A DNA stretch of 44,259 nt from Octopus bimaculoides (GCF_001194135.2 NC_068996.1:7804085-7848343); one strand, 5' to 3'; positions 1 to 43,865 are shown, counted from the first letter of the stretch. Notes: generated by a model not told the origin, from the letters alone. Numbers and translations: made by a program.

Positions 1-281
1 TTATTCTTTCGGTCTCTTTTGCCGAACCGCTAAGCTATGGGGGACATAAACACACCAGCATCGGTTGTCAAGCGATGTTGGGGGGACAAACACAGACACA
101 CAAACATATATACATATATACGACGGGCTTCTTTCAGTTTCCGTCTATCCACTAATAAGGCTTTGGTCGGCCTGAGGCTACAGTAGAAGACACTTGCCCA
201 AGGTGCCACGCAGTGGGACTGAACCCGGGACCATGTGGTTGGTAAGCAAGCTACTTACCACACAGCCACTCCTACGCCTAT
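1..281 (-). mobile_element. tRNA-derived SINE (octopus-type), near full length, runs off the window start
   Basis: The reverse strand begins TAGGCGTAGGAGTGGCTGTGTGGTAAG (A-box-like) ... GGTTCAGTCCCAC (B-box-like), followed by GGGCAAGTGTCTTCTAC...GCCGACCAAAGCC. The same core recurs at ~1770, 6010, 24591, 27610, 40234 and 43866. Family assignment is from memory of octopus SINEs. Confidence 0.8.
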
Positions 282-10479: not shown

Positions 10480-12945
10480 ATCAGATGAGAGACATCACAA
10501 CAACCTAAGTAAATACAACTAGATACAGATTCTGACAGCAAGCTCTCTTCTTTGCTGTTATTTGGAGTAAAATATGGGACTTGATTAGCGAAAGGGAAGT
10601 GTGGGCCAAGCAAGAGGATAAGGAAAATGAAGCAGTGGGGAAGGGGAAAGAACAGCCTAAGAAAGCAATGGGAATGTGCAGAGGAAGATGAAAAACCTGG
10701 CCTCACTCAGCTGTACAAAGATTTAAAAAGAAAATGCCATTATGTGCAACAAAATATCTGCCGAAATGAATGAAGAAAAGAAAGCAAAAGAACTCATGAA
10801 CAGTTTCTGAAGAACTCATACAGGGTAACCAAGAAGCTGCTCACTGAACCAAAGAGTGATGCGAGCATCCAATTCTTCTTTTGCACACGATAAAGTGCCA
10901 AACTTACAGCAATGCAGATTATAACCAGCCACTGCCTCCTATAAATAAGCTAAAGAATCTCTTAAAACCTGATGTCAAATTTCAAATTGGGGACCTCAGG
11001 GAGAAAGAGGTGAATGATTTTGTGAGAAAAGCTTGAGCAAAGAGTGCCCCCAGTTGATGGCATCTCACATAACAAATATTGCAATCATCTACGAAAGAAG
11101 CTCTTTGTCCTACACTGACAGCTGTAGTGCGAAGAGCCTCTAGTAGAGGGTTGGTGTAAAGCAGAAGGCATATACCTGCTGAAGGAGGCCAATGCAGAGA
11201 CTATAAAACAGTTTAGGCCGATATCCTTATTGAATGTGGAAGACAAGATCTGTATGGGAAGTCTCTCAAGGAGAACAGTGGCATATTCACAGAGTAATGG
11301 ATATGCTGAAGAATCTGTTCAAAAGGCTGGAATCTCTGGGACTCCTGGATGTGTTGAGCATTAATTATCAATTTGGAAAGCGATCCAGGATGCCAAACAG
11401 AAAAAGAGAAGTCTGAATGTGGTATGGCTTGACCTAGCTAATGTATATGGCTCAGTGCCACACGAATTACTGCTAAGAGCCATGAACCACTTCCACATTC
11501 AAGACAAAGTGATCAAAATAATGAGGATATATTATGAGAAGTTTCAAGATGAGGTTTACAGCTGGAGATTTTACAACAGATTGGCACCGATTGGAGATTG
11601 GCATTACTGCTGGTTGCACAATATCTGTCACATGGTTTATCCTAGTCATGGAGACGATTTTGAAAGCAGTATACTTTTCAGAACAAATGCCCCATACACA
11701 ATCACCTAAGAAGGCCATCATGGAGGGCATGACACTTCTGTAGACAGACAATCAAATCATGCAGAGTGTTCTCTTGAAGATAGACATGCTGATGTGATAA
11801 AGGATGCAATTCAGGGTAAAAATCACAAGTAGTCTGACATTAATGGAGTGCAACAACAAGCTAAGTTTAAAATAACTGAGGAATGCATTCCAAAAGCCAA
11901 GGAAAAACCTGTTAAGAGCTTGGTGCATGTATAATGTACACCAATGTTCCAGTGTATACACTGTATATGCTGAAATATTGTCAGATGCAAATTATGAAAC
12001 AAGCCAAGGATGGGTTAACAGCAATTGATAACTCAAAGCTACCAGGTAAATATAAAATATGGTGCTTACACTTCGGCTTGTCTCTGCACCTTTTGTGGCC
12101 ACTTCTAATATACAAGGTGGCACTGTTACAAGTTCAAATCATTGAAAAAAAGTGTAATGTGTTCATGAGAAAGTGGCTCGGCCTACCTCAGACATTAAAC
12201 AGCTCAGCTCTTTATTGTAAACTGTTTGCAAGCATGATGCAGAGCGAACACAGATCTGTTGTTTGCTTTGACACTGTTGCTAAGGAAAGAGAGAGAAGAG
12301 AGCTTCATTTAATGCAATGCTCTCAACAAGGACAGATGATGAAATGGGAGGAACACATTGTTGAGAAAAATAAACTGGAATGAGAGATGGAGGTGGACTA
12401 CATCTCAGCTAAGTTTCCTAATTCGATCATCCTATAATGTCTTGCCATCGCCATCAAATCTAGTAAGATAGAACATATCAGAGAATGATAAATGCAGATG
12501 TGGAGAAAATGGAAAACTGAAACATATTCTTTCCAACTATTCACTGGCATTGGATACATGCAGACACAATCTGGTCCTTAAGGTTATTCTCAATTCTATA
12601 AAGAACCAAATTGCTCTCATCAACAGTGAAAAAAAAATACAATGAAAGAACCAACAAGAAATTTCAGTACCTTTGAGTGCTCAGGACAGCAGATCCATTT
12701 GAGGAAGAACAAACTCCCTGTGAGTGATGAGAAGTGGAATAGCTACTGAGAGAAGTCTACAGATTTACCAGGGTGCCAAGGATTCTTTGCCATTCCAGTT
12801 ACAAAGAAAGCGGATATCATAATATGGTGTGAAAGAAAAAAAAGTGGTAAATCTAGTTGAGTTAATGGTTCCACATGAAGACAACGTGGATGCCGCTCAG
12901 GCTCAAAACACTGACCATTATATAAACCTCCTTGAGGAATGTGAA
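10480..12945 (+). mobile_element. Hero-like non-LTR retrotransposon D (RT, CCHC and restriction-like endonuclease; pseudogenised)
   Basis: QFRPISLLNVEDKI, QKAGISGTPGCVEH, VWLDLANVYGSVPH, WHRLEIGITAGCTIS, KYKIWCLHFGL, MMKWEEHIVE, and C-terminal ADIIIWCE...VELMVPHEDNVDAA (PD-(D/E)XK-type). There are many stops and frameshifts. Confidence 0.9.
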
Positions 12946-13105
12946 GAATGTACACTATCAAAAATACAAGTACATAGGTAAGTGTAAAAATATATATATA
13001 TATATATAAGGATATATAAGGATGAACAGAGGTCGCCGTGCTGCTGTTGTTGGGTACATCAGGGTATGTCGATTTGTTTATTCTTTATGTGTCTTGTCCA
13101 TATGT

Positions 13106-13174
13106 GCACTGATGAATAAAAGATGCAGTTTACTGCATAGTTTTGCTGTATTAATTATGAAACCAGTGGTTTGC
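13106..13174 (+). ncRNA. Putative type I hammerhead ribozyme, copy 1
   Basis: Stem I GCA/TGC; CTGATGA 13109-13115; stem II base ATAA/TTAT enclosing the ATGCAG/CTGCAT hairpin; GAAA 13159-13162; stem III ACC-AGT-GGT; H17=T13171. The A10.1-U11.1 pair and the long AU-rich stem II are atypical. Confidence 0.5.
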
Positions 13175-13604
13175 CGTTAAGTTTTTAGGTTAGCTTTGAT
13201 GGTTGCATTCCCTGCGATAGGTAAACATGTGCTTATTTTGGTAGTTTTGACTTATTAAGTCCCTCGAAGCGTGAGGCTTTATTTTATAATAATGCCCTTA
13301 TATGGATTATATTATATATATTTATGGGAAAAAATGATGGGTTTTTTTCCTTATGAGGTTTTTTTCATGCTGACTACTTGATAAATTCTTTAAAAGATTT
13401 TATCCTTATATTATATCACAAATAATTAGAATATATTCAGTGCTGAATATTATTCTGTAAAAGCACATGTTGCCGAAAATGTAACTTGAATAGCCCGCCT
13501 CTTTCACGGATATATAAGGATGAACAGAAGTCACCGTGCTGCTGTTGTTGGGTACATCAGGGTATGTCGATTTTTGTTTATTCTTTATGTGTCTTAACCA
13601 TACG

Positions 13605-13675
13605 TGCACTGATGAATAAAAGATGCAGCTTACTGCATAGTTTTGCTGTATTAATTATGAAACCAGTGGTTTGCA
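13605..13675 (+). ncRNA. Putative type I hammerhead ribozyme, copy 2
   Basis: Same core shifted by exactly +500 nt: CTGATGA 13609-13615, GAAA 13659-13662, predicted cleavage after 13671. Stem I TGCA/TGCA is 4 bp. Confidence 0.5.
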
Positions 13676-13810
13676 GTTAAGTTAAAAGTTTTTAGGAGGT
13701 TAGCTTTGAAGGTTGCATTCCCCACGATCGGTAAACATGTGCTTATTTTGGTAATTTTGACTTATTAAGTCCCTTTAAGCATGAGGCTTTATTTTATAAT
13801 AATGCCCTTA

Positions 13811-13811
13811 C

Positions 13812-13888
<77 letters not shown>
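13811..13888. repeat. Compound (TA)n(CA)n microsatellite
   Basis: Seen directly in the sequence. Confidence 0.95.
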
Positions 13889-13889
<1 letters not shown>

Positions 13890-15411
13890 GTTTCTTAGCA
13901 GACAAACAAGGTGTTTATATCTTTCTATCACATGCAGTGTTGGCAAAATATCTATAGATATATTAATAGAATAAGGATAACAATGAAATAAGAACAATGC
14001 ACCAGTAATTTATTAATGCAAACCAGGAAAAGTTTAGGCTATTTTGGCCAACACTGTAGTACACTTTCTTCCACCCCTTTCTGTTGTTCATGTGGCAACC
14101 ACACCAACCATGTAGCAACCGATGTTTCATTTCTTACACATACATACACACCCATAACTCAAAATAGTTTTAAGACAAAGTTGTGAGTGCATATATGAGC
14201 ATGAGAGCAGCAAAGACCAAGCAAGAAAAATAGAGAGATAAGTGGAATAAGAAAGAGGGTGTCGAGAGAGCCCAGTATCTGTTAGCCACTCAGTAATGAA
14301 GCTACAGCAATGCTATTGTAAAATGTTGAGTTTTGAATTAATAATAAACTGAACTGCACATGTTAATTACTCAAACTTTTGTGTGAAAACGTTTTCACAC
14401 CATATGTAGCTTCAAATATTAAATAAAATCAAGAATGGACACTAACAAGTTAGTGGTGAAATACAATATCTAAGAAGAAAAAAAAAATCATCATCGTTTA
14501 ACATTCATCTTCCATGCATGGATAGGAAAAATAATAAAGAAGACATAAGGCTTAAAATAATATGTAACATTTACTGTAGAAAGCAAATGAATTAATGATG
14601 TAAAACACAGCTGAACAAATACTGTTTTTAAAAATGCTAAATTTATTTAAGTAACTGTAATCATTGATTGTTATACTATAAAAAGTATAAACCTTGCTAA
14701 ATCTGCAAAAGATTCATCCACAAACAAATGAGGAAACTATGTAGTCATTTGACTTGCAAAAATAGCAGTCAATTTTCCCACAAATCATACCCAAAAGTCT
14801 TAAAAGAAATGAAACAAACAAAAAAAGATAAAGAGGAAACAAAAGAAACATTAATACAGTCCTAAAATACAATGTGTAGATGGGATTGTCATGAGGGATA
14901 TTTTTGACAATATGCTTACTCAAATCTGACATCTGGGAATTGAAACAAGAACAGATTTATTCCAATCCTGACAACATGAGCAAGGAGCAACAGTAACATC
15001 AATGACAGAAATAGATACTGTTCGAAAATATTTCAAGAGATATCATCTATCTTGTACTATATCTGTATTAAAACTTATCCAGAATACCAACTATTTTTAT
15101 TGGTCAGTGGACTTGAAACATTAAAAAAAAAAGAAAAAAAAAAAAAGCAGAAATATCAATGCTTTAGTCCAAATGAAGATTAAAGAGTGTGTTCATTTAG
15201 CAAAAAGCAAAAACAAAAATTACCATCCCTAAATATAGCATTTCAACAGATGATTTCATATTAGGAATCTTGCAAAAAAAAAAAATGTAACAGGCTAGCA
15301 AGATGTTGAACACTATAAATGCTTCATATCTACAAAAAGAAAACAAGAGAAAACAAGTGGAAATCGATGGAGGAAATTGCAAAGGAAGCTGTAAGAATCA
15401 GCAGGAAAATG

Positions 15412-16049
15412 TCAGTAATGATGGCACTAAAGCAGCAGCATGAAGGGAAAAGAGCAGCTTGGAACAATAAAACCACATGGCAAACAAAGGGCCGCTGGCA
15501 AGGAACGGGCCATCGGCAAAGAACGGACATATCAGCAATGAAAATGCCGTCGGCAAAGAAAGGGCCAACAGCAAAGAACAGTTCATTGGCAAAGAAAGGG
15601 CCAACAGCGTAGAAAGGCCCGTCAGCAAAGAACGGGTCGTTGGCAGAAGAAGGGGCCATTGGCAAAGAACGGCCCGTTGGCAAAGAACGGCCCATTGGCA
15701 AAGAACTGGCTGCAATGTGTATAAGCTGATGTTGTATTCTGTTTACCTTGCTCTTATTTACAAATGAGTTTGCACCTATCTTCAGATATAGATGAAGACC
15801 ACAGAAGATGAAAATGGAGCTAAATTAACTATTCACAAATGCATCTCAAGAAAAGCCATATCACTGTGAAAGGCCAACGGCAAAGGAAGGGCCCTTGGCA
15901 ACCAAGCTAAGTTGATCCAAGAAGGTCAAGTAGTTGACTAATTCTACCAATCCATTCCTGCTTTATAAATAAATAAAAAACATTGCAAATATGCCATCCT
16001 TTCATTGTTTTATGACTATATTAAATTCAATCCACATTTATTTCCTTTT
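15412..16049 (+). repeat. Segmental duplicate, copy 1, containing an 18-bp minisatellite (GGCAAAGAACGGCCCGTT-like, ~15478-15712)
   Basis: Aligns with 17856-18366. Copy 1 has more minisatellite units and ends at the N gap. Confidence 0.9.
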
Positions 16050-16567
16050 NNNNNNNNNNNNNNNNNNNNNNNNNNNNNNNNNNNNNNNNNNNNNNNNNNN
16101 NNNNNNNNNNNNNNNNNNNNNNNNNNNNNNNNNNNNNNNNNNNNNNNNNNNNNNNNNNNNNNNNNNNNNNNNNNNNNNNNNNNNNNNNNNNNNNNNNNNN
16201 NNNNNNNNNNNNNNNNNNNNNNNNNNNNNNNNNNNNNNNNNNNNNNNNNNNNNNNNNNNNNNNNNNNNNNNNNNNNNNNNNNNNNNNNNNNNNNNNNNNN
16301 NNNNNNNNNNNNNNNNNNNNNNNNNNNNNNNNNNNNNNNNNNNNNNNNNNNNNNNNNNNNNNNNNNNNNNNNNNNNNNNNNNNNNNNNNNNNNNNNNNNN
16401 NNNNNNNNNNNNNNNNNNNNNNNNNNNNNNNNNNNNNNNNNNNNNNNNNNNNNNNNNNNNNNNNNNNNNNNNNNNNNNNNNNNNNNNNNNNNNNNNNNNN
16501 NNNNNNNNNNNNNNNNNNNNNNNNNNNNNNNNNNNNNNNNNNNNNNNNNNNNNNNNNNNNNNNNNNN
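16050..16567. other. Assembly gap (N run)
   Basis: Run of N. Confidence 1.
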
Positions 16568-17855
16568 CGATGGCACCAGACATACCAGAGAAGCCACAGG
16601 CAATTAAAATAGTAAATCTCTCTCATAAAGAACTAACACCCAACCAGATAAACATACTATCCAAAGGACTAAAATTTACACCAACCCCACAACGACCAAA
16701 TTACCATGAAATGAAAGATGATATTTCTGAGTTTTGTAGAAAATTAAGATTAGCCGAGGAATTCTATGACAAACACATTGACGACGATTCAATAGCTAGA
16801 AATAGCAGCAACTACACCCCTACAAAGCCCTCGACCAATTCTGTGAGCACATCACCAATTACCCTTATCAATTCACAAATAAACAAAAACACAGACCAAA
16901 CTTCAACAAGAGACAATGGAACGACTTTAACGAACTGAAAGATAAAACCATAACAATCAAAGAGGCAGATAAAGGTAACGCAGCAGTCCTAATGAACACG
17001 GGGGACTATAAAAATCTAGTACTATCTCTATTAGGGGATGAGACATTACGAAAAGGCCCCACACTGTAACCAATATAAAATAATGAATAATCTCAGGACA
17101 TTACCTCATACCGAGATGGACTCACAGCCAAGGAATACGACTACATTACCAATTTCAAGGGTAAATCAAGTTTATTCTTCGTTATCCCCAAAATCCACAA
17201 AAGTAGAATAATAAGCGATGCATGAAAAGGAGCTACAGACATAATTATCAAGGTCCCCTCACCCGATGACCTGAAACTAAGACCAATAATAGCAGGTCCA
17301 GCATGTGAAACCCACCGCCTCAGCAGCTTCTTGGACACTCTACTGAAACCCTTCCTAAAACACACCAAGAGCTTTATAAGGGATGACCTGGACATGCTAA
17401 ACCACCTCCCAAAAACGGTCAATGAGAAAACACTACTAGTATCCTTCAACGTAGTCAACCTATATTCAAACATCCCACACACTCTAGGAATAGAGGCCAT
17501 CACATTCTGGTTAGACAATTACACCTATGAACTCCCCTCTCGCATTAAAAAAGAGCTTATAATAGAAAGATTAAGATTTATCCTAGAAAATAATTATTTT
17601 ATATTTAACAATGAATACTTCGACAAAAATGGGGACTGTAATGGGAACACAGACTGCGCCTTCTTGTGAACTTGGTCATGTGCTATCTCGAGATTAAACT
17701 ATTCCAGAGAACACTCGAGAAATATGGAGACTCCTTTTCCACCTACATTCAAAACAACTGGAAAAGATATCTCTATGACTGCATCATCCACTGGAATGAA
17801 AGTATAGGAAAACTCAACGAATTCCAAACACTTCTAAATGGAATAAAGGAAAACC
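16568..17855 (+). mobile_element. Penelope-like element (PLE) RT fragment, 3'-truncated
   Basis: IVNLSHKELT...ILSKGLKFTPTP, IKEADKGNAAVLMN, VIPKIHK, LRPIIAGPACETHRLS, LVSFNVVNLYSNIPH, KMGTVMG and RYLYDC (cf. RYLDDC). The sequence stops just before the expected 'KFTME' motif. Confidence 0.9.
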
Positions 17856-18366
17856 TCAGTAATGATGGCACTAAAGCATCAGTATGAAGGGAAAAGAGCA
17901 GCAAGGAACGGTAAAACCACAAGGCAAAGAACGGGCCGTCAGCAAAGAATGACCCCATCAGCAAACAACGGCCCGTCGGCAAAGAACGGGTCATTGGCAG
18001 AAGAATGGGCCGTTGGCAAAGAACGGCCCAACTACAAAGAACTGGCTGCAATGTGTATAAGCTGATGTTGTATTCTGTTTACCTTGCTCTTATTTACAAA
18101 TGAGTTTGCACCTATCTTCAGATATAGATGAAGACCACAGAAGATGAAAATGGAGCTAAATTAACTATTCACAAATGCATCTCAAGAAAAGCCGTATCAC
18201 TGTGAAAGGCCCACGGCAAAGGAAGGGCCCTTGGCAACCAAGCTAAGTTGATCCAAGAAGGTCAAGTGGTTGACTAATTTTACCAATCCATTCCTGCTTT
18301 ATAAATAAAAAAAACATTGCAAATACGCCATCCTATATTAAATTCAATCCACATTTATTTCCTTTT
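17856..18366 (+). repeat. Segmental duplicate, copy 2 (shorter minisatellite array)
   Basis: TCAGTAATGATGGCACTAAAGC ... CCACATTTATTTCCTTTT is nearly identical to 15412-16049 apart from minisatellite copy number and a short deletion. Confidence 0.9.
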
Positions 18367-18599
18367 TTCTCTTCAAAATCAATCAAACATCAAAGGCAAT
18401 ACAATAAAAAGCCAACCAACAGATGAGACATGGTTTGTCACTCTTCTAATCACACACAATGCTAACTTCACATTATGTCCCTCGTTTCACTTTAGTATCT
18501 CATTATTCCAAATCCACATTGGAGTTCATTAACCCTTTTTTGTTACCAAACCAAACTGATATAACCTCTGGTTCTACAATATACTGTTATCTCAGCCAC

Positions 18600-18720
18600 C
18601 TTTTTACCTGTAGACCTATAAGATTACTATTTTATTCTTGTGGATCCCAATAGTGATTTAATGCTTAAAAACTATGTTTATGTATTTCTTTTACAAGATC
18701 ACTGATGTGAAACTATAAGC
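18600..18720 (+). mobile_element. Internal fragment related to the hAT MITE at 23475
   Basis: TATTTTATTCTTGTGGATCC...CTATGTTTATGTA...CAAGAT...CTGATGTGAAACTA is shared with 23518-23605. Confidence 0.5.
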
Positions 18721-18782
18721 ATAGAGTTTACAAATTAGTTTTATAGAAACTGTGGTAATTGCATTGGATTATTGATATCTTG

Positions 18783-18784
<2 letters not shown>

Positions 18785-18826
<42 letters not shown>
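18785..18826. repeat. (TA)n microsatellite
   Basis: Seen directly in the sequence. Confidence 0.95.
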
Positions 18827-21549: not shown

Positions 21550-22850
21550 AACTTGCACATTCAAGTGCTACCAGTCGAGAACTCCGCATACCGGAAGCCA
21601 GCAAGTGTATGGGGCCATCAGGAGAGGATGCGAGCCATTTTGGGGCCTACCTTTCGACAGCATCAATGCGCACCGACCCCACCTCACTGATGAGGCCCTG
21701 CTTGCTAGATCAACTGGTTATTAAATATAGCCCCATAATTCTCTAGCCATTGCTCATCTCTTTTTAACCAAATCTAGTGGCTAGCCTTCTCCACTGTAGT
21801 TTGTATATCGGTCATGGCGGTATTTACCTCACGATGAGTTAGGCCTAATGATAACAGTTGTCTCACACTATGTCCAACAAACCCTCTACATCCAACTTCC
21901 ATTGGAAAATGTTCCGCTTTCCAGCCTGAGTCTTCACATTCGTTGAGGAGGTTTACATAACAGTCAAACTTTTGAGCCCGCGCAGCGTCCACATTATCTT
22001 CATGAGGAACCGTTAACTCGACTAGATTCACAACTTTCCTTCTTTCACACCACATTAAAATGTCAGGTTTTTCCGTAACTGGGATGGGAAAGAATGCCTG
22101 GCACCCAGGCAAATCTGCAGTCACTTCTCAATAGTCGTTCCACTTTTCATCGCTCATAGGATGTTTGTTGCTGTTCTTGAAACAGATCCACTGACCTGAG
22201 CGCATGAAGGTTATGAAATCTCTAGTTGGTACTTTCAACAGTTTTTTCTCAGTGTTGTTGAGATGAATTTGGTTCTTCATAGCATTGAAGATAACCTTAA
22301 GGACCAGGTTGTGTCTCCATGTATACTTGTTCAATGCCAATGAACAGCTGGAAAGAATATGTTTCAGTGTTCCAACCTTTCCACATTTGCATATGTCATT
22401 CTCTGAGACATTCCATCTTACTAGAATTGTAGGTGATGGCAAAATATCATAGGATGAACAAATCAGAAAACTTAGCCGAGATGTGGTCCACTTCCATATC
22501 TCATCCCAACTTATTTTCCTCTCAACAACATGTTCCTCCCATCTCGTCATCTGTCCTTGTTAAATACATCAGATCAAATGATGCTCTCTTCTCTGCTTCT
22601 CTTGTTTTGATGCTGTTGCTAATAACAGATCTGCGTTCGCTCCAAATCATACTTGCAAACGGTCTGAACTGATTTGCACCAAAATCAAGTCCTCTCCGAT
22701 GGTTTTGTATTGCACCTACCATATCTTTGTTTGTAAGATAAGATGTCATCAGTTTCTGCTTCTGCTTTCCATTCCTGGCTGTTTTCACCTCTGGTGGGTT
22801 ACACCTGATTTCCATGTCCTTTGATTCTCTCAGCATAATGATGGAAGGTG
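21550..22850 (-). mobile_element. Hero-like non-LTR retrotransposon E, 5'-truncated 3' end
   Basis: MTRWEEHVVERKISWDEIWK, CKCGKVGTLKHILSSC...WRHNLVL (CCHC) and KPDILMWCE...VELTVPHEDNV...PMEVGCRGFVG (REL endonuclease), followed by a GC-richer 3' UTR at ~21550-21770. Confidence 0.9.
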
Positions 22851-23474
22851 TCCAAAAACAACAAAATGCAAGGGCATTATATCACAACATAATAAAAGAA
22901 TTTTACAGCAAAATTGGTGATTGGTCTCCAATCTGGAATGTGCATTTATTAAAGAGAAGGATATCTAACATGCAAAAATAGCTTAATATATCATGAAAAT
23001 CAGCCATTTATTCTAGCACTTTATAGAACCACAATATTAGCTAAAATACATGACACACATGAGCATTCAACACGGCTGTGTTTAGTGGCCTGAGTTGGCT
23101 TACTCAGCAGAGAAGTTTGTCAAATCTGACAGTTGCCAGAATGTTAGGCCAGATTTAGTAAAGACAAATGATTCATGGCCTATTTCTGACCCTGGGAACG
23201 TGTGCATATGGATTGGGCATATGTATCAAACATCGGTAATGTACTTGCAATAGTTGATGCCTATTCAACATAGATCGAGGCATTTTTGTATCCTAATCGC
23301 TCAATTGAGACCGAAAAAGCAAGTTGCCTGAGGTCTTCACTCTTTTCTGTGTGTCCACAGCTTTAGTACTGGACAACAGGCCTGAATTTGTTGCATTAAA
23401 GAATATGTTATCATTGGGTTTCAGGAAAATTGAGACACTTGCTTACAGTCTGGCATCTAATGGATTATCTAGAT

Positions 23475-23803
23475 CGGGGGTTCTGAACCATTCTTTTACC
23501 AATAGACCCCTTCAATTATTTTATCCTGGTGGATCCTAATCGCCATTTGATATTTTAAATCTATGTTTATGTAACTGTTTTGCAAGATTCCTGATGTGAA
23601 ACTAACTTCTTTCTATACCTAAGTCTAGTTTAAATTATGCAAAATGTGAGAGAAAGAAATGTTTTCTGCAAGGAAAAAAATTCAAGGCAAAATTTTTTCA
23701 GAGATGCTTAAAATACTATTGTGGAGCCCCCCAAATCTTACATGGACCCTCAGGGGCCATATGGACCCTTAGGGACCATATGGACCTTGGTTGTGAACCA
23801 CTG
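23475..23803. mobile_element. hAT (Charlie-like) MITE, 329 bp
   Basis: Perfect 8-bp TSD ATCTAGAT (23467-23474 and 23804-23811). Termini are CGGGGGTTCTGAACC ... GGTTGTGAACCACTG. Confidence 0.85.
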
Positions 23804-23810
23804 ATCTAGA

Positions 23811-24022
23811 TTAACTGTTTAAGTTTTAAATCAATCATAACTAACCCAGGTATTCTACCTGTTTTTATGTTCAATCCTCCAGATCCAGTCTCAATCTACT
23901 CTACAATGTCAGTTTAAAAATAAATGCATCATTGAAATCTTAAAGCTACCAAATCATGCATAATTCAAAAGAATGGTGAATAAGCATCACAAGTTACAGT
24001 AATCAGAACATTTAAGGTTTAG
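23811..24022. mobile_element. Degenerate copy of the 19992 piggyBac-type MITE
   Basis: Shares TATTCTACCTGTTTTTATGTTCAA...CCAGATC...CTACAAT...AAAAAT...AAATCT...AGCTAC in the same order. Confidence 0.45.
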
Positions 24023-24590
24023 ATTTGTTGCCATTTTGGCTAACAAGCACTACCATATTACATTGAACAGAAAAAAGTGTGCAGGCATAAGAGAATGACT
24101 TAAAGAGGAAAAACAAAATGTGGGCAAATCAATCACACAACAATCTCCTTGGTTCTCAGAACCCATATAAAATTTCATCCACCCCACCACCTTTCAGAGA
24201 GGTATCCTCCATTTGAGAAGCAACAATACGGAGAAATGAAAGTAACATTCCAAATATGTTACAAAAATATCTCAAGCATTATGGTGGTAGAATTGGTAGA
24301 GATTAGACAAGTACCTCATCTTTGGTTATGTCCCTTTAAGCCTTTTTTTATTCATCCATATCAGCCTGGGTTGGATGGGTCTCGGTGTCCAACAACATGT
24401 CACACACTTTTATCCTATGGTACAAATAAGAGTTGTTTGATGGTTATTTCAGAATTGGTTGTAAATGCTGTTGGCCACTAAAAATACTAGCAACAAAATA
24501 AACCAGTCACTCCCTTTAATCATTTAGCAAACTCACAGTTGATGTCCCAAGCTTGGACGGACGGACACATACACACACTTCTTTTCAGAC

Positions 24591-24697
24591 ATAGGAGCAG
24601 TATGTTTGTGTGGCAAAATGTTTACTTCTCAACCACATGATCACAGGTTCAGTCCTATTGTGGGGCACCTCAGGCAAGTGACTTCTATAGCCCCAAG
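24591..24697 (+). mobile_element. tRNA-derived SINE 5' fragment
   Basis: TAGGAGCAG...GTGTGGCAAAA...CAACCACATG...GGTTCAGTCC...GGCACCTCAGGCAAGTG is the same family as 1-281. Confidence 0.65.
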
Positions 24698-25327
24698 TTC
24701 CAAATACCAGCCAAATGACATTTTATTACATTCATTATTTTCAAAATTGAAGCAATTTCAAAATTAATTGAAAGGCAATGTATTTCAATAGAAATATTGT
24801 AATCAAAGAGTTAATCCACCACTTCACTAATTCTGGAAACCACTGTCCTTAATACAAAGAACAAAAGCGGTACAATTTAGAAAACGCCAAACAAATATAA
24901 GATATTTAGTTTGTACCTTGTTTGCTTTAGTAATAAAAGCAAACAAGGTTCACACTAAACATAGGTGTTAAAATTGGATGCCAACTGAGATTTACACGAC
25001 CTTAAAGGTAATTTCCATTTAATTTCCAATTAGCACCTGTGAAAATATCAGGATAAGGAAAAATATACTTGCAGAAAGCAATTATATAAAGTAGTGGTAT
25101 ACCAAACAATAAGAATTGCCAGTAGTATTAGTAATAAAGTTTGGAACTGAGCCAAACTCAATCAGCTTGGCTACTACCTGTACAAACTATTCTGCTTCTG
25201 TTAAGTGGTTACTTTGTATAACAAGCAAAGCTTATTTTCTTCTTACACATAGCAAAATAATCTATAACATCAATCAAGTGTATTTTTATTTTTTCAAGAT
25301 GAAGAGAGAAAGCGTATTAATTATGTA

Positions 25328-25439
<112 letters not shown>

Positions 25440-26504
25440 AATGATTTTAAAGAAATATTTATAACTGGTGGGAGTGGAGGTGATTATTTAAAGAAATCAA
25501 TCCTGCAACATGGCTGGATTCAGGTCACAGACTGGAAAGACAACATATCTGAACAATATCAAATAACTGGCCTTTACTGAATAAGGAGCACATTAAGTAT
25601 TATTTATCTAAAACTAGTTACACATACACACATATATACACATAACTACATATATGTGAAAGAGAGACAGAAAGATGATGGGCATAACTTGATACTATTT
25701 TATTCCAATTATCACACGTTTTCAGCAACATGTCACGGTAGATGCAACCAGATGCAGCTCATAAGGCCAGCATGGAGCAAATATTGTCAAAAAATCAAAA
25801 GCTGTGAGTATAATGTGATTAACATTTGAGTAGAAACCTACATGGTTTAATTGTCATGTTGAATACATTCAATCATATACCCCATCATGTGTGTGTGCGC
25901 ACATGTCATTTCAAGAAACAGATAGGCTTCAAGTATTTATGACATGTAATAGAATCACATAGTCAAATCTGATTAAAAGATTATATAGAAGTAAATAGCA
26001 TATATGTTTACACATATTGAATGATTACATATATATAGTATAGCTAAACATTGCACATAGAGATATAATGTTTTTATACATGAGGAGAAAACAATTACCC
26101 TAAGAAAAAATAGTTTTACATAGGTCCAAATTTGGAAATTCAGTGGGGTACAGTTGATCATAGGACTCAGTCTTTCAACGGTTCATTTCATTTCATCAAC
26201 CCCCACGAAAAGGTAGAACGTAACTAAGATAAGAGCTTATAATAAAGTATATACTACAATGCATATCATCTGATTATGAAGTAATTTTGCCAATTTTAAA
26301 TGACAGTTTGGCATTACATTAGCATAAATATTCAATTCAAAAATATTAGATAGAAAACAGAATATTGCTTATAACCACTTAGCGAAATATTTCAGTGTGG
26401 TTATTTGTGTTAGAAAACTTCAGATAAGAGACGAAAATGTTTTTGATCTTTATCATTTAGCAAATGTTTCAGTCATTGCACTGTGACCATGCTGGGGCAC
26501 CACA

Positions 26505-27690: not shown

Positions 27691-30600
27691 TGTGGTGAAA
27701 TCCTGACACTCCTGTAAAATAGCAAGTGAACTGTCCTAAACCTAAAAATGCCGCATGCATGCTGACAGTGCAACGTAGTGTGGCACATGCGGTCGCATTT
27801 GTAAAGGCAGTCGTAGAAGTTCTTGAGAAGAGATATAAGTTTGTTACGTGTTTGTTACTGATTTAGTGTTTGTAGTCTTATAACACTGTTACAGTGTAGT
27901 CTATATCTAAAGTCAAGGATATAAGAGTGGTGATGAGACGACATTCAAAGTTCACTGTGGACATTCTTAGCATGGAAGACCTATTAGCTTCCATGGTACA
28001 GTTGCAACAGCAACTACAACAAAATCAACAGGTACAACAATAACAGCAAACTCAACAGTTGTTGGAATTATTGTTGCAGTTCAAAAACACTTCAGGTTTG
28101 TTCAAGGCAGACACGGTTGCTAATTCAACTGAAGAAATTTATAATTCAGAAGGGATTACGTTTTCTGCATACTTCTGAAGGTATGAAGGAATCTTCAAAG
28201 AATGTAGAAACTGGACGGACAAAAAGGTACAGCTTCTTTTAAGGAAATTATCACCTGCAGAACATGTAAAGTATTGGAATTACACCCTACCGAGAAAACC
28301 CATCCGAAATTTGTTTCAAGAAAACAACCTGTTATCTAAAATATTCAGTGAAAGAAGTTCACTGTTTAATATTTGCTGGGAGTGTTTGAATTTAAGAAAA
28401 AAATGAAATTGAAGATTTTGTCATGTATACCGGAATTGTAAACAGAGAATGTGAAAAATTTAAACTAAGCGAATTAACCCAGACATGTACAAGGATTAAC
28501 TGTAAGCAAAGATGCAGAGATATGGGCTCAGATATTGACAAAACTAGAACAAGATTCAAAACTAACTCTACAGGCAATAGCTGAAGAATGCCAAAGGATT
28601 ATAAATTTACAACAGGATGCAGAAACAAATTGGAAAAAATTATTCAAATATACAGATGTGTCGACCTGTAATAGATAAGAAAAGAAAAACAACAGTCAAG
28701 ACCTGAACCATGCTATGAGTGTGGAGAAAAACATTTTAAAAGAAACTGTCCTTTTAAAAATCTAAAATGTTGTGGATGTGGAAAAATCGGACATAAGAAT
28801 TCACATAGTTGGGCGAAGCAAAAAAGGTTGAATGAAAAATATTCAAGAAAAAAGTATTGTCAACACAAATGCAAAGAGAGACACCAAAAAAAACAAAAAA
28901 ATGTGTCTCCATAAAAATAAATGTGAATGCAAAACTACAGTTGGATACAGGTAGTGATATCACAATAATTAACAAGGATGCATGGAGAAAAATAGGAAAG
29001 TCGACATTGAAGAAACTTTGAAAATTGCGCGAGGTATTTCAGGGAAACAATTGCAATTTTGGGGCAAAATAAACAAGGTGACATTTCGCAGAAAAACTTT
29101 GAAAGCCAAAGATTTTGTATTAAAAAATACAAGCCTTAGCACAGATTGGATGGAATTATTTAATTTATGGGACCTCCTCATAAATGTTTTTTTGTAATAA
29201 TGTAAACAGTTCTTATGCCAGTTCAAATAAGGCATCGGAGGATTTAAAAAAGAAATTAAAGATTTTTTCCTCATGTTTTTTCTGAAGAATTAGGTAGGTG
29301 CACCAAGACAAAAGTAAAATTTCAAATGAAAGAAAACGCTGTACTGGTATTTAAACCAAAGTGAGTTGTACCTTTCACAACACTGAATTAAGTCAATGAG
29401 GAATTGGATAGACTTGAAAAGCTTGGAGTTATAGCAAAAATTAATTATTCAGAATGGGCATCACCAACTGTTTATGTAAAGAAAAAAAAATACAAGTGTA
29501 TGCTGACTTTTCAACAGGCTTGAACGACTGTTTAATGACATACTATTACCCATTACCAATTCCAGAGGAAATTTTTGCAAAAATCAATGGAGGAAAATTT
29601 TTTTTCAATGTTGGACTTGTCAGAGGCATATCAACAGTTACAAGTGGAAGAGGAATGTTCGAAATTATTAACGATAAACACCCAATAAAGGTTTATATGA
29701 ATTCATTCAACTTCCTTTTGGGATAAAGATGGCACCTAGTCTTTTCCAACAGGTGATGGACAACTATTCTTGCGGATACGGATTTCGCTATAGCTTACTT
29801 GGATGACATACTCATAAAAAGTGAGTCTCAAGGCCAACGTGAAGAACATGTTAAAAAGGGCTTTGGAAGAATAAAAGAGTATGGATTTAAACTTAGCAAA
29901 GAAAAATGCAAATTTTTTATGCCAAAAATAAAGTTTCTAGGGCGAGTTATTGATAAAAATGGTCACAGACCAGTTCCTTCAAGATTGACTGCAATAAAAA
30001 ATATGCCTCCCCCTGAAAAAATTACATTACAAGCATTTTGGGGCTCGCAAACTATTACCAAACAAATATACTGAATATGCATGAACTAAGAGCACCCCTA
30101 AACGACCTATTGAAAAAAGATGTTAAATGGTATTAGTTGGACAGGTGCCAAAAAGCATTCAAAGAAATTTTAAAAGTTTTAACATTGGAACTGTCATTAT
30201 TGCATTTTGATCCAAATTTAGAAATATTAGTAGAATCAGATACTAGCAAAAGTGGTATAGGAGCAGTAATTTTACACAAGTACGAAAATGGTAGCCTAAA
30301 ACCCATCGCTCATGCTTCACGTTCATTGTTGGTGGCTGAAAAAAACTACAGCCAAATTGAGGAGGCATTAGTCATTATTTTTGCAGAGCAAAAATTTCAG
30401 ATTCATACATGGAAGGAAATTCAATCTGCAGACAGATCACTGCCCATTGTTATCAATTTATGGATTGAAAAAAGGGTATCCCCCACACATACAGCCAAAA
30501 CAATTGCAGTGCTAGAGGGACAATCCTGCTAAATTATGACAAAGATGGAATTTCTACCATCGAAAAAACTGGGACATGCGGATGGGCTGTCAAGATTGAT

Positions 30601-32265
30601 ACCTAAATACAATGAACTGTTAGATAACACAGTTAATAGCAGCATTAAAAGCTGACATCGAAATAATAAATATACTCTGCAACATAGTACACAAACTACC
30701 TGTCACTTTAGAAGAAATAAAAATCAAAGCAGAGAAAGATGAGTTCATAATAAAAATGAAAAAAATAGTGAAGTCAGAAATAAATACAAAACCTCATGTA
30801 GCCAAGCATAACAGTTTTGAAATGGCTAAGTGGTTAGAGCATCAAGCTTACAATTGTGAGGTTGTGAGTTCGACTCCCAGACCGGGCTGCATGTTGTGTT
30901 TTTGAGCAAGACTCTTTACTTCATATTACTCCAGTTCACTCATCTGTAGAAATGAGTTGTGATGTCACTAGTGCCAAGCTGTATAGGCCCTTGTCTTTCC
31001 CTAGGATGACATTGGTGGCATGGAGAGGGGAGGCTTGTATGCATGGGCAACTGCTAGTCTTCTATAAAAACAACCTTGGGTTGTGTGTTCACCAGTGAGG
31101 TGACTTTCTGCCCAGACTTGCACCCCCGGAGGGGAACCACTTAGATGTACCCATGGTCATTCGTGACTGACAGAGTAGAGTTTTTTTTACTTATGTACAC
31201 TGAGAGGGTTGTAATATCCATTTCTTTGCAAAATCGTACACTAAAAGAATTCCACATGAGACATCCAGGAATCACGAGAATGAAAGCACTGATGAGGAGC
31301 CACATTTACTATCTGAAGATAAATCAGGATATTGAAAAATTGGCAGCAAAAGCACCACTTATAAAAATTCAGCTTTGGTATAAGATTGACATACCTTGGT
31401 CCAGATTACACAGACTTCACAGGACCGTTAAATTGAGAGTATTATCTTATAGTTGTGGACAGTTACACGAAATGGTCAGAAATATATAAATGTAAGAAGC
31501 CAATTTCCAAAGTAACAATGGAATTTCTGGATGAACGTTTTGTATGATATGGTGTCCCGGACACAGTTCATGTTGAAGGAATTTATAAACTTTTGCAAAA
31601 TGCATGCAATGGAGCCTATTAATACTCTGCCATATCATCCAAGATCAAATGGACGAGCAGAACACTTTGTAGACACATTCAAGAGGGCCCTGAAAAAATC
31701 TAGGTATGAGCTACTAGCTGATGCTGCGTTGATGCAATTCTTAAGTGTCTACTGAATAACACCAACACCACTTCAGGTAGGTTGTCGGCTGAACTAATGT
31801 TTGCTAGGAAAGTCAGGTCAGTGATTGACAAATTACTACTGGGAAGAAAAGCAATGGAGAGAAACACCGAAAATAAGATGAAATACTTCAAAATCGGTGA
31901 CAAGGAGTGTTTTTTTTTTAAATATACAGAAATGGAAAAGAAAGTTGGGAGGGTATAATAAGTAAACATTTAGGAAAAATAATGTACATGGTAAAAAGTC
32001 ATACATGGGAACACAAAAGACATTTAAACCAACTGAAAGGAAGGTTTATGGAAGAAAGAATAAGACACAAAGAACCAATGAAATTTCTTTGATACTTTTG
32101 ATGTACCAGTACCTCAAGGAATAGTCAAACCAACAAGTACATCAACTAGGAAAAGAAAAACAGAACTTTTGCAAGCAAGTAGAGCCAAAACAAAAAAGAT
32201 GATCAAATTTCTTCCTGGGGAATTAAGTAAAAAAAAAAATCAGGGGGTGGGGGACGAGGTGGTAA
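27691..32265 (+). mobile_element. Ty3/Gypsy LTR retrotransposon, near full length and pseudogenised
   Basis: Putative 5' LTR 27691-27926 starting TGTGG; PBS-like TGGTGATGAG (27928-27937). Gag from ATG 27972 (MEDLLASMVQLQQQ) with zinc knuckles CYECGEKHFKRNC and CCGCGKIGH. Protease KLQLDTGSDITII; RT AYLDDILI; RNase H SDTSKSGIGAVILH...YSQIE; integrase HPGITRMKALMRS and NGRAEHFVDTFKRAL; PPT-like GGGGGTGGGGGACGAGG (32243-32259). Confidence 0.9.
30819..31143 (+). mobile_element. tRNA-derived SINE (second family) inserted in the Gypsy pol
   Basis: A-box TGGCTAAGTGGTTA and B-box GAGTTCGACTCCC. The core GAGCAAGAC...CTCCAGTTCACTCA resembles V/Meta-type SINE central domains (recalled). Gypsy coding sequence resumes on both sides. 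Confidence 0.8.
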
Positions 32266-32580: not shown

Positions 32581-33045
32581 TGTGTATGTATGTATATATA
32601 TATATNNNNNNNNNNNNNNNNNNNNNNNNNNNNNNNNNNNNNNNNNNNNNNNNNNNNNNNNNNNNNNNNNNNNNNNNNNNNNNNNNNNNNNNNNNNNNNT
32701 ATATACATATATATATATATATATACATATATATATACATATACAGAGAGAGAGAGAGAGAGAGAAAGAGAGAGGGAGAGAGAGAGAGAGAGAGAGAGAA
32801 AGAAAGAAAGAGAGAGAAAGAGAGAGAAAAAGAAAGAGAAAGAGAGAGAGATGTATATGTATACATATACATGTATATGGGCACGTATATGTATAGATAT
32901 ATATATAGATCTATATGCATACATGTATATGTATACATATGTGTAGATGTATATAGATAGGTGTACATCTAATATGTACACATATATAAATGCATACAGA
33001 TATCTATACATATATACACCCATACACACACAAACACACACATTA
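32575..33045. repeat. Compound (TA)/(GA)/(TATG) low-complexity block containing the N gap 32606-32699
   Basis: Seen directly in the sequence. Confidence 0.95.
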
Positions 33046-39955: not shown

Positions 39956-40231
39956 ATAGAAACCATGACAAATCAGACCAGAGTATGGTGAAACAATAAA
40001 AAAAATTAATTGAATGTTACAGAATTTATTTTTGATTTTCTTTTCTTTTTTATTCTTTAGATATTTTACTTTGCAATGTATTGTGTTTTCTTATACACAT
40101 CACATTGAATGTTCTAATCATTTGAAGCCTAATGGTCCAGAACACAAAGGACTCAGGAAACAAGAAAAGCTTACAGGCACCAATCTCAGAGATGACAAAA
40201 TGCCATGGAAACAAGAACAAGAAGTAAAACT

Positions 40232-43518: not shown

Positions 43519-43865
43519 TAACTAAATTATCAAGCAATTAACACAGATACACACACATATGGTTCAGCTCATAGATAATGCATGTTGTTTAAGACGAGGA
43601 ATGAGTGGCAGCAGACATTTCAATAAAGCCCAAACATGGCACCTGACATAATTACCTAATTCCTTTTATAAACAAACCCAATTACTTACATACAGAAACA
43701 AATGAAGGGAAGGTCTCAATGATTGCTTGATCTGATCTGCTAAAAACAACAGTCAAATTTCCCTCAGATTACACCTTGCTGATTTACCTTTTCCCTTACC
43801 ATATTTCTGTTGAAATGTCTTTCAATTATTTTGAAAATTAATTTGGAAGGATTTAGTCTGATACC

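What the first reader, a model, noticed from the sequence alone, without database searches (positions are those of the whole stretch)
13010..13810. Retrozyme-like element: two hammerhead ribozyme motifs exactly 500 nt apart in direct repeats
Seen in the sequence: an ~800-bp non-coding element with two ~300-bp direct repeats inside a (TA)n tract. Each repeat has CTGATGA, a stem II closed by ATAA/TTAT around an ATGCAG/CTGCAT hairpin, GAAA, a near-palindromic stem III (AAACCA-G-TGGTTT), a GUU site and a 3-4-bp stem I. The only difference between copies in the stem II region falls in the hairpin loop (TTTA vs CTTA). Established: tandem HHRs that excise a monomer, which then circularises, define retrozymes and HHR satellites, and palindromic stem III loops allow dimeric folding. 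Inference: a 500-nt RNA (13172-13671) is released and may circularise, making this a non-autonomous element probably mobilised by PLE machinery. There are no TG..CA ends, PBS or PPT, so it is not an LTR-type retrozyme. I do not know of such a family from cephalopods but cannot exclude that one is described. Caveats: the A10.1-U11.1 pair, H17=U and the long AU-rich stem II are suboptimal.
Basis: partly seen in the sequence, partly recalled or inferred. Interest (0 to 1): 0.85.

Follow-up and report, generated by a model that had tools for sequence, protein, structure and literature searches.

The report
Direct repeat with doubtful hammerhead motif
A ~0.5-kb non-coding stretch of octopus-like DNA is present as 1.7 head-to-tail copies between TA microsatellites, and each copy carries a string that reads like a hammerhead ribozyme; no independent test supported it as a ribozyme, so the retrozyme reading stays a minority possibility.

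Summary
Two ~320-bp direct repeats (13010-13331 and 13508-13840, about 91% identical) flank a 176-bp spacer and lie between (TA)n tracts. Each repeat carries CUGAUGA, 43 nt, GAAA, ACC-AGU-GGU, then U17, exactly 500 nt apart. The two motifs are one event copied by the duplication.

A descriptor set at the motif's own values is rare: about 0.002-0.007 hits per 44-kb window. Every feature sits at the minimum and looks like AT-rich background: helix I of 3-4 bp, helix II closed by four A-U pairs, A10.1-U11.1, U17.

No Rfam hammerhead model matched, even in a 91-nt search. The monomer hammerhead fold takes 3e-5 to 4e-4 of the ensemble, because CACUG/CAGUG pairs the core with stem III. A double-hammerhead fold is possible but is not the best dimer.

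No other copy turned up, but no cephalopod genome could be searched.

The strongest signal is different: an 87-nt hairpin with 10 G·U pairs opens each repeat and folds only on the + strand (z about -5).

A Penelope-like element with the same partial-tandem layout, ending in (TA)21, lies 1.5 kb downstream.

Verdict: an ordinary low-copy repeat. A genuine atypical retrozyme has a probability of about 0.15-0.2.

The parts
12990..13008 (.). Left flanking (TA)n microsatellite
   Evidence: Read directly. It follows the 3'-truncated end of an old RT element, whose homology stops at 12947.
13010..13331 (+). Direct repeat copy A, about 320 bp including its TA-rich tail at 13299-13331
   Evidence: 90-91% identical to copy B, in register at offsets 498/500/510.
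13009..13095 (+). 87-nt hairpin of copy A that folds on the + strand only (37 bp, 10 of them G·U)
   Evidence: -35.2 kcal/mol, z -4.65. The minus strand gives -7.8 kcal/mol, z +0.57. Second most strand-asymmetric of 2127 100-nt windows on the + side, after copy B's hairpin.
13106..13174 (+). Hammerhead-like string, copy A. Helix I 13106-08/13172-74. Core CUGAUGA 13109-15. Helix II insert 13116-58. GAAA 13159-62. Helix III 13162-64/13168-70. U17 at 13171.
   Evidence: No Rfam hammerhead hit. The hammerhead fold takes 2.7e-5 of the ensemble.
13332..13507 (+). Single-copy spacer U. It holds a palindrome at 13429-13457 and a short inverted match (13456-13496) to 13188-13241 of the repeat.
   Evidence: 13172-13507 folds better than shuffles on both strands (z -3.1 and -4.2).
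13508..13840 (+). Direct repeat copy B. Its TA-rich tail merges into the right-hand (TA)n.
13508..13594 (+). 87-nt + strand-only hairpin of copy B
   Evidence: -37.3 kcal/mol, z -5.36. The minus strand gives -11.0 kcal/mol, z +0.90.
13605..13675 (+). Hammerhead-like string, copy B (helix I 4 bp; U17 at 13671)
   Evidence: the hammerhead fold takes 4.0e-4 of the ensemble.
13812..13888 (.). Right flanking (TA)17 followed by (CA)21
   Evidence: TRF.

Best explanation
The locus is a low-copy, non-coding unit of about 0.5 kb present as about 1.7 head-to-tail copies (A-U-A') at a TA microsatellite. The hammerhead-like string in each A copy is most likely a fortuitous or at best vestigial match, not a working ribozyme.

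Shown: the repeat, its boundaries in TA-rich tracts, the motif as text, and a + strand-specific G·U-rich hairpin at the start of each repeat.

Inferred:
- The copies arose by a DNA-level event in slippage- and exchange-prone TA tracts. One route is unequal exchange that duplicated [U-A-tail], followed by loss of the first U. The left end carries a 10-bp ATATATAAGG duplication.
- The duplicated segment already held the hairpin. With 10 G·U pairs and at most one A·C, that hairpin was shaped at the RNA level on the + strand, so it probably comes from an older transcribed or retroposed sequence.
- No RNA is excised by self-cleavage.
For: - The repeat is real and unique within 44 kb.
- Both motif copies are one duplicated sequence.
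- Every motif feature sits at the descriptor's minimum and matches AT-rich background: helix I 3-4 bp, helix II closed by four A-U pairs then an internal loop, helix III 3 bp plus a triloop, A10.1-U11.1, U17.
- No Rfam hammerhead model matches in the window, in 1 kb, or in 91 nt at E<=10.
- The MFE pairs CACUG (core C3-G5) with CAGUG (stem III). The hammerhead fold is 4.3-6 kcal/mol worse and takes 3e-5 to 4e-4 of the ensemble.
- TRF with the published retrozyme-pipeline parameters does not report a tandem repeat.
- No other copy was found in the window, in 21 kb of Octopus bimaculoides DNA, or among ORF-derived proteins of 5.8 billion clusters searched in six frames. By contrast, another dispersed repeat shows up three times in the window and once in L003.
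- TA-rich tracts sit at all three unit boundaries, and a 10-bp tandem lies at 13002-13023.
- Published warning: relaxed hammerhead descriptors give mostly false positives (PMC6155905, PMC3088659).
Against: - A motif passing even this relaxed descriptor is rare: 0.002-0.007 per window. It falls inside the only such direct repeat of the window, and on the strand that the hairpin marks as the RNA strand.
- A non-integer copy number with TA tracts on both outer sides comes from one step of PLE-style or rolling-circle retroposition. A DNA-level route needs two steps.
- PLE-associated hammerheads are themselves atypical: helix I 2-5 bp, long helix II, small palindromic helix III, weak in vitro (PMC4209133).
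- The double-hammerhead fold (-38.0) beats two separate monomers (-35.3).
- The absence of other copies is weak evidence, because no cephalopod genome could be searched.
Confidence: 0.5

Rival explanations
1. Genuine PLE-type non-LTR retrozyme, or two 5'-truncated PLE 3' ends in partial tandem. The unit is U+A (about 510 nt) plus an upstream 5'-truncated copy. It was inserted by PLE reverse transcriptase/endonuclease into (TA)n. Each unit carries an atypical hammerhead that works only as a double hammerhead through the near-palindromic ACCAGUGGU, releasing a 500-nt RNA that a tRNA ligase may circularise.
For: - The core is intact and the motif is rare by chance.
- Two motifs lie 500 nt apart on the strand that carries the strand-specific hairpin.
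- The predicted monomer is strongly structured: z -5.1 on the + strand against -2.8 on the - strand.
- The double-hammerhead fold is more stable than two monomers.
- The element is flanked by (TA)n. It has a non-integer head-to-tail copy number like PLE pLTRs. A PLE with that layout, ending in (TA)21, lies 1.5 kb downstream.
- The literature matches several traits: PLE hammerheads have a short helix I, a long helix II and a small palindromic helix III (PMC4209133); retrozyme units span 51-972 bp, mostly <=7 units (bioRxiv 10.64898/2026.07.22.740005); (TA)n is a preferred target and 'half-core' motifs have 35-50-nt spacing in Naiad PLEs (PMC8557442).
Against: - No Rfam hammerhead match.
- A10.1-U11.1, U17, an A-U-only base of helix II followed by an internal loop, and a 3-bp helix I together look like background sequence rather than a selected ribozyme.
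- The core is sequestered in the MFE.
- The double hammerhead lies 4.7 kcal/mol above the best dimer.
- No family member was found.
- No significant similarity to the neighbouring PLE's pLTR, and that pLTR has no CUGANGA..GAAA core.
- TRF does not call the locus a tandem repeat.
Confidence: 0.18
2. Another kind of small non-autonomous mobile element with terminal direct repeats (TRIM-like, or an unclassified retroposon with a TA-rich tail), inserted in (TA)n. The hammerhead string is fortuitous.
For: - The A-U-A' geometry and TA tracts on both sides.
- An RNA-strand signature in the hairpin.
- The region is dense in nested transposable elements.
Against: - No TG..CA ends coinciding with the repeat boundaries, and no PBS, PPT, TSD or poly(A).
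- No tRNA-like head.
- No other copies found.
Confidence: 0.15
3. A duplicated hairpin-RNA locus (miRNA-like or other structured non-coding RNA). The 87-nt hairpin is the functional unit, and the duplication copied it together with neighbouring sequence.
For: - A 37-bp stem that folds only on the + strand, z about -5, kept in both copies. A 2-nt bulge in copy A is paired in copy B through a UU insertion.
- The 5' half of the repeat, which holds both hairpins, differs less between the copies (about 4%) than the 3' half (about 10%).
Against: - No Rfam miRNA or other family match of note.
- The apical loop is only 5 nt.
- No expression data. With only two related copies, conservation is uninformative.
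Confidence: 0.1
4. Assembly artefact: haplotypes or reads mis-joined at microsatellites.
For: The window comes from a gapped scaffold assembly (N runs at 16050-16567, 32606-32699 and 33227-33953), and the repeat is bounded by microsatellites.
Against: About 9% divergence with several indels between the copies, a unique spacer, and no N gap inside the locus.
Confidence: 0.03

Closest known systems
Metazoan non-LTR retrozymes (type I hammerheads in short tandem repeats; Cervera & de la Peña 2020, PMC7229834; Li et al. 2026 preprint)
   Same: - Low-GC, non-coding, head-to-tail repeat with a unit inside the published 51-972-bp range.
- One CUGANGA...GAAA...UH motif per unit on one strand.
- A short near-palindromic helix III that could support a dimeric hammerhead.
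- A strongly structured predicted monomer.
   Different: - Only 1.7 units, which TRF does not call.
- The hammerhead fails all Rfam models and has A10.1-U11.1, U17 and a 43-nt helix II with an A-U-only base.
- No family, no expression evidence and no similarity to a PLE pLTR could be shown.
Penelope-like element partial tandems (pLTRs) with minimal or atypical hammerheads (PMC4209133, PMC8557442)
   Same: - A 5'-truncated copy followed by a longer copy.
- A (TA)n target.
- Short helix I, long helix II, small palindromic helix III.
- Core halves 35-50 nt apart, as reported for some Naiad 3' UTRs.
- A real PLE with this layout lies in the same window.
   Different: - No reverse transcriptase or GIY-YIG coding sequence.
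- No significant sequence similarity to the PLE at 15.4-18.8 kb.
- That PLE's own pLTR has no hammerhead core.
Plant LTR retrozymes / TRIMs (PMC4918200)
   Same: Two direct repeats of about 300 bp, each with a hammerhead-like motif, around a short non-coding internal region.
   Different: - The motif has type I topology, not type III.
- No TG..CA ends, PBS, PPT or TSD.
- AT-rich, whereas plant retrozymes exceed 55% GC.
Ordinary local segmental duplication at microsatellites
   Same: Two diverged copies, boundaries in TA-rich tracts, a 10-bp slippage duplication at the left end, and no other copies seen.
   Different: - A non-integer copy number needs a second event.
- It does not by itself explain the + strand-specific hairpin or the motif.

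Membership tests
Hammerhead ribozyme (type I) | Conserved core C3 U4 G5 A6 N7 G8 A9 / G12 A13 A14 / A15.1-U16.1, H17 | tested here: met
   CUGAUGA at 13109/13609, GAAA at 13159/13659, A15.1-U16.1 possible, U17 at 13171/13671.
Hammerhead ribozyme (type I) | Three helices abutting the core, paired next to the core, without multiple mispairs in short stems (criteria of PMC3088659) | tested here: inconclusive
   Helix I is 3 bp (copy A) or 4 bp (copy B). Helix II is 4 A-U pairs, then a 2x2 loop inside a 43-nt insert. Helix III is 3 bp plus a triloop. All are at the minimum. The 10.1-11.1 pair is A-U, not the near-universal G-C.
Hammerhead ribozyme (type I) | Match to curated covariance models (Rfam hammerhead families) | tested here: not met
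   No hammerhead family at gathering score in the window, none at E<=10 in 1 kb, none in 91 nt. Caveat: a 43-nt helix II insert is penalised, and PLE-type variants may be poorly covered.
Hammerhead ribozyme (type I) | The catalytic fold is thermodynamically accessible | tested here: not met
   Monomer: the hammerhead fold is 4.3-6 kcal/mol above the MFE and takes 3e-5 to 4e-4 of the ensemble. Dimer: -38.0 against -42.7 for the best dimer and -35.3 for two monomers, so the dimeric form is inconclusive.
Hammerhead ribozyme (type I) | Conservation and covariation of the helices across independent copies | not testable with these tools
   Only two copies, both from one duplication. No cephalopod genome was searchable.
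Hammerhead ribozyme (type I) | Self-cleavage 3' of H17 | not testable with these tools
   Needs an in vitro transcription assay.
Non-LTR retrozyme | Tandem repeat (TRF) with at least two consecutive units, each holding a complete hammerhead (pipeline of bioRxiv 10.64898/2026.07.22.740005) | tested here: not met
   TRF '2 7 7 80 10 50 1000' reports only the microsatellites. Two motifs exist, but the array is 1.7 units.
Non-LTR retrozyme | Non-coding, low-GC unit of about 50-1000 bp | tested here: met
   GC 0.33, no ORF above 67 aa, unit about 500 bp.
Non-LTR retrozyme | Multi-copy family; sequence related to a PLE pLTR | tested here: inconclusive
   No copy in the window, in L003 or in the other loci. 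Similarity to the window's PLE 3' end is at chance level. The genome-wide test was not possible.
Non-LTR retrozyme | Expressed as linear and circular RNA of unit length | not testable with these tools
   No transcriptome access.
LTR retrozyme / TRIM | TG..CA LTR ends, PBS after the 5' LTR, PPT before the 3' LTR, short TSD | tested here: not met
   Repeat homology extends 13 bp upstream of the only possible TG. Copy A's LTR end would read TA, not CA. The sequence after copy A is TGGATTATATTA, AT-only after the TGG. There is no purine tract unique to the spacer and no TSD.
PLE partial tandem (pLTR) | A 5'-truncated copy followed by a longer copy, often in (TA)n; sequence homology to a PLE | tested here: inconclusive
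   Layout and target fit. Homology to the one PLE available was not found.

The most novel reading that the evidence does not exclude
The locus is a first cephalopod non-LTR retrozyme, or a PLE-derived partial tandem. Its hammerhead breaks several near-universal rules (A10.1-U11.1, GUU site, 43-nt A-U-based helix II, 3-bp helix I) and cleaves only as a double hammerhead through the ACCAGUGGU near-palindrome. The G·U-rich + strand hairpin would then be part of the rod-like circular RNA, and might even record A-to-I editing fixed by retroposition.
Probability: 0.15. Interest if true: 0.55.

Novelty: new member of a known kind. Interest (0 to 1): 0.27.

Why it matters
If the hammerhead were real, it would extend retrozymes to cephalopods. 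It would also show that a hammerhead can tolerate an A-U pair at 10.1-11.1 together with a very long A-U-rich helix II. That would be a modest addition to a known class.

As it stands, the locus shows that a relaxed hammerhead descriptor can be met by AT-rich sequence, and that a duplication can make one match look like a "tandem ribozyme pair".

The strand-specific G·U hairpin is the more solid oddity and is cheap to test with RNA-seq.

Tried and rejected
1. Rfam at three scales (44 kb at gathering score; 1 kb and 91 nt at E<=10). No hammerhead or any other ribozyme family matched. Only noise appeared: weak C/D-snoRNA hits from the UGAUGA box and mir-297 on the TA/CA microsatellite.

2. Search for relatives. 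None of these gave a related copy.
- blastn of the element against the window.
- A 20-mer scan of JGI metagenomes gave one chance 21-nt hit.
- A scan of GTDB genomes gave one chance 28-nt hit in a bacterial MAG.
- Two scans of IMG/VR gave nothing.
- Protein searches with the 64-aa ORF and with a six-frame concatenation gave nothing.
- HMMER against 1.84 billion representatives gave nothing.
- Exact-product look-ups of window ORFs were not on record.
- Loci around RT homologues, including 21 kb of O. bimaculoides, held no copy.

3. An eyeballed resemblance between the motif region and the PLE 3' end (CACTGATG...AGTTTAC...TAGTTTT...GAAAC.GTGGT at 18697-18765).
- Smith-Waterman against shuffles gave z about 3 for the chosen 95 nt.
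- Unrelated real windows score as high or higher, so the lead was rejected as chance.

4. tRNA-derived SINE head (GGTTGCATTCCC resembles a B box). ARAGORN and Rfam found no tRNA-like structure.

5. LTR/TRIM reading: no hallmarks.

6. Insertion into the upstream RT element. That element's remaining 3' part does not resume after 13888.

7. Supplementary consensus files of the Naiad paper were not held as sequence.

Full report
**What is there**

- Two direct repeats, A (13010-~13331) and B (13508-~13840), align at 90-91% identity. The register offsets are 498, 500 and 510 because of three indels.
- The repeats enclose a single-copy spacer (13332-13507).
- (TA)n lies to the left (12990-13008). 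(TA)17 followed by (CA)21 lies to the right (13812-13888).
- The repeat similarity continues into a TA-rich tail (13299-13331 against 13810-13840), so the array is about 1.7 units of a ~500-bp unit.
- There is no ORF longer than 67 aa and GC is 0.33.
- blastn finds no other copy in the 44-kb window.

**The hammerhead-like string**

Each repeat reads GCA-CUGAUGA-[AUAA...43 nt...UUAU]-GAAA-CC-AGU-GG-U-U|UGC.
- C3 lies at 13109 and 13609, and U17 at 13171 and 13671, so the two motifs are exactly 500 nt apart.
- That spacing follows simply from the duplication. The two motifs are one sequence, not two observations.
- The only difference inside the core and helices is T/C at 13129/13629. A C/A difference at 13175/13675 lengthens helix I from 3 to 4 bp in copy B.

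**Is it more than chance?**

I wrote a descriptor set at the candidate's own values: helix I >=3 bp, helix II >=4 closing pairs, spacer <=60 nt, helix III >=3 bp with a 3-12-nt loop, A15.1-U16.1, H17, G·U pairs allowed.
- It finds only these two sites in the window. With the thresholds relaxed to I>=3, II>=3, III>=1, they are still the only two.
- Markov sequences of the window's composition give 0.007 hits per 43 kb.
- In 77.7 kb of real DNA, 2 of 539 decoy cores of the same composition give a hit.
- So the match has a per-window probability of about 0.002-0.007. It is not trivial.
- In a genome of about 2.7 Gb (size from memory) hundreds of such matches would still be expected.
- The thresholds were set after the fact.

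**Quality of the motif**

Every variable feature sits at the minimum and carries the letters that AT-rich background would supply.
- Helix I is 3-4 bp.
- Helix II is closed by four A-U pairs followed by a 2x2 internal loop.
- The 10.1-11.1 pair is A-U. It is described as the most conserved pair of the consensus apart from A15.1-U16.1 (PMC3088659).
- Position 17 is U.
- Helix III is 3 bp with a triloop.

Independent tests gave the following.
- No Rfam hammerhead family, nor any other ribozyme, matches at gathering score in the window, at E<=10 in 1 kb, or in a 91-nt search where hits of 8-16 bits are listed. The long helix II insert and the atypical PLE-type variants weaken this negative, but it remains a negative.
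- The MFE of the 75-93-nt segment is not a hammerhead. CACUG, which includes core C3-G5, pairs with CAGUG of stem III around a long imperfect hairpin. The stability is no better than shuffles (z -0.3 to -1.3).
- Forcing the hammerhead helices costs 6.0 kcal/mol in copy A and 4.3 kcal/mol in copy B. The hammerhead-compatible ensemble fraction is 2.7e-5 and 4.0e-4.
- A double hammerhead with an extended helix III (ACCAGUGGU against itself: 8 pairs and a G·G mismatch) gives -38.0 kcal/mol. That is better than two separate monomers (-35.3) but worse than the best dimer (-42.7). A dimeric mode is therefore not excluded.

**What the literature allows**

- PLE-associated hammerheads are themselves odd. 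They have helix I of 2-5 bp, helix II of 6-8 bp and a small palindromic helix III. They act as dimers and cleave poorly in vitro (PMC4209133).
- Metazoan non-LTR retrozymes are low-GC tandem repeats. Their units span 51-972 bp and most families have <=7 units (PMC7229834; bioRxiv 10.64898/2026.07.22.740005).
- PLE insertions are typically 5'-truncated partial tandems, and for Naiads (TA)n is a preferred target. Some Naiad 3' UTRs carry the two core halves 35-50 nt apart (PMC8557442).
- The same literature warns that relaxed descriptors yield mostly false positives (PMC6155905; PMC3088659).
- TRF run with the retrozyme pipeline's parameters does not report this locus, because 1.7 units is too few.

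**An unexpected, more solid signal**

Each repeat begins with an 87-nt hairpin (13009-13095 and 13508-13594).
- It has 37 pairs: 27 Watson-Crick and 10 G·U, with at most one A·C opposition.
- On the + strand it folds at -35.2 and -37.3 kcal/mol (z -4.65 and -5.36; 0 of 200 shuffles as good).
- On the - strand it does not fold (-7.8 and -11.0 kcal/mol, z +0.6 and +0.9).
- Among 2127 100-nt windows, these two are the most strand-asymmetric on the + side: 26-29 kcal/mol against 18 for the next. Only the trivial (TA)n(CA)n junction matches them, and it is asymmetric the other way.
- A decaying DNA palindrome should collect G·U and A·C oppositions equally. Ten against 0-1 points to shaping at the RNA level on the + strand, by selection or by a strand-specific process such as editing followed by retroposition. 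That last step is inference.
- The + strand is also the strand of the hammerhead-like string.
- The predicted 500-nt monomer has z -5.1 on the + strand and -2.8 on the - strand. The rest of the unit (13172-13507) is moderately structured on both strands (z -3.1 and -4.2), owing to short inverted repeats.

**Surroundings**

The window is octopus-like repeat-rich DNA.
- A degraded RT element (~10.5-12.95 kb, + strand) has O. bimaculoides LOC106867650 as its best named homologue. It is 79% identical in DNA to that locus.
- A second copy of this element lies on the - strand (21.8-~26 kb).
- The + copy's homology stops at 12947 and does not resume after 13888.
- A Penelope-like element lies 1.5 kb downstream on the + strand. 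Its ORF runs from 16570 to ~17880, with motifs such as LSKGLKFTPTP, IPKIHK, LRPIIAG and SFNVVNLYSNIPH. The PLE assignment rests on my memory of these motifs.
- Direct repeats at 15403-16049 (cut by an N gap) and 17847-18366 (74-90% identical) flank that ORF. The element ends at (TA)21, 18785-18826.
- So PLE-style partial tandems that end in (TA)n do occur here. However, that pLTR has no CUGANGA...GAAA core, and its 3' end is not significantly similar to the element.
- (TA)n tracts are common in this window, seven in 44 kb. This lowers the weight of the flanks.

**Relatives**

None was found by any route open to me: window blastn; exact-pattern scans of JGI metagenomes, GTDB genomes and IMG/VR; ORF and six-frame protein searches; HMMER against cluster representatives; and about 135 kb of fetched loci, including 21 kb of O. 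bimaculoides.
- No cephalopod genome could be searched, so this only excludes a very high copy number.
- As a positive control, another dispersed repeat appears three times in the window and once in the O. bimaculoides locus.

**Weighing**

For the retrozyme reading:
- an intact core, rare by chance;
- a position inside the only direct repeat of this kind in the window;
- the RNA-marked strand;
- TA flanks;
- a non-integer head-to-tail layout, which one retroposition event explains;
- a plausible dimeric fold;
- a PLE next door.

Against it:
- every helix and every free position looks like background rather than a selected ribozyme;
- no covariance model matches;
- the core is sequestered in the monomer;
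- there is no family evidence;
- there is no link to a PLE sequence.

A rough odds calculation compares two rates per window. One is the density of genuine loci times the chance that a genuine hammerhead looks this poor. The other is the chance rate of a motif falling inside a direct repeat. Depending on the guesses, it gives anything from about 1% to about 30%. I settle on 0.15-0.2 for a genuine hammerhead lineage. I give about 0.5 to a local duplication carrying a fortuitous motif. The remainder goes to other mobile-element or hairpin-RNA readings.

**Verdict**

Its central claim, a working tandem hammerhead releasing a 500-nt RNA, is unsupported though not refuted. Even if true it would be a new member of a known class. 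Interest is low to moderate. The strand-specific G·U hairpin is the feature most worth a quick look in RNA data.

Noticed in passing
window 13009-13095 and 13508-13594 (+): An 87-nt hairpin with 37 bp, 10 of them G·U. It folds only on the + strand (z about -5, against z>0 on the - strand). These are the most strand-asymmetric windows on the + side of the whole 44 kb. A 2-nt bulge in copy A is paired in copy B through a UU insertion.
   Followed up: yes
window 15403-18826 (+): A Penelope-like element in partial-tandem (pLTR) layout. Direct repeats 15403-16049 (cut by an N gap) and 17847-18366 are 74-90% identical. The ORF runs 16570-~17880 with frameshifts. The element ends at (TA)21, 18785-18826. 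No CUGANGA..GAAA core lies in its pLTR. The PLE assignment rests on RT motifs recalled from memory.
   Followed up: partly
window 15473-15710 and 17923-18026: An 18-bp minisatellite (GGCAAAGAACGGGCC...) sits inside both pLTR copies of the PLE, with different copy numbers.
   Followed up: no
window ~10500-12947 (+) and ~21774-26000 (-): Two diverged copies (77% identical over 730 bp) of one RT retroelement family. They are 79-88% identical in DNA to an O. bimaculoides locus (LOC106867650). The + copy is frameshifted and 3'-truncated at 12947. The - copy keeps an intact C-terminal ORF.
   Followed up: partly
window 1-269, 40249-40353, 43904-44011; L003 3710-3980: A dispersed short repeat (SINE-like?) is present at least three times in the window and in the O. 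bimaculoides locus. ORFs 40014-40394 and 43810-44196 share a long identical peptide stretch, and 40579-40606 and 44232-44259 repeat the same 13-mer tandem.
   Followed up: no
window 13937-13953 / 14040-14057: A 17-bp inverted repeat, CAGTGTTGGCAAAATA / TATTTTGGCCAACACTG, about 85 bp apart, just right of the (CA)n. It could be a MITE-like or hairpin element.
   Followed up: no
window 15123-15146: An A-rich tract of 24 nt, possibly the poly(A) tail of a + strand retroposon ending just upstream of the PLE.
   Followed up: no
window 12974-12983: CATAG|GTAAGT, a consensus-like 5' splice site, lies right after the truncation point of the RT element and before the (TA)n. Probably chance.
   Followed up: no
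window 30137-31489 (+): ORFs that look like LTR-retrotransposon pol fragments (RNase H-like and integrase zinc-finger-like). This is judged by eye only.
   Followed up: no
window 16050-16567, 32606-32699, 33227-33953: Assembly gaps (N runs). The first hides the junction between the upstream pLTR and the PLE ORF.
   Followed up: no
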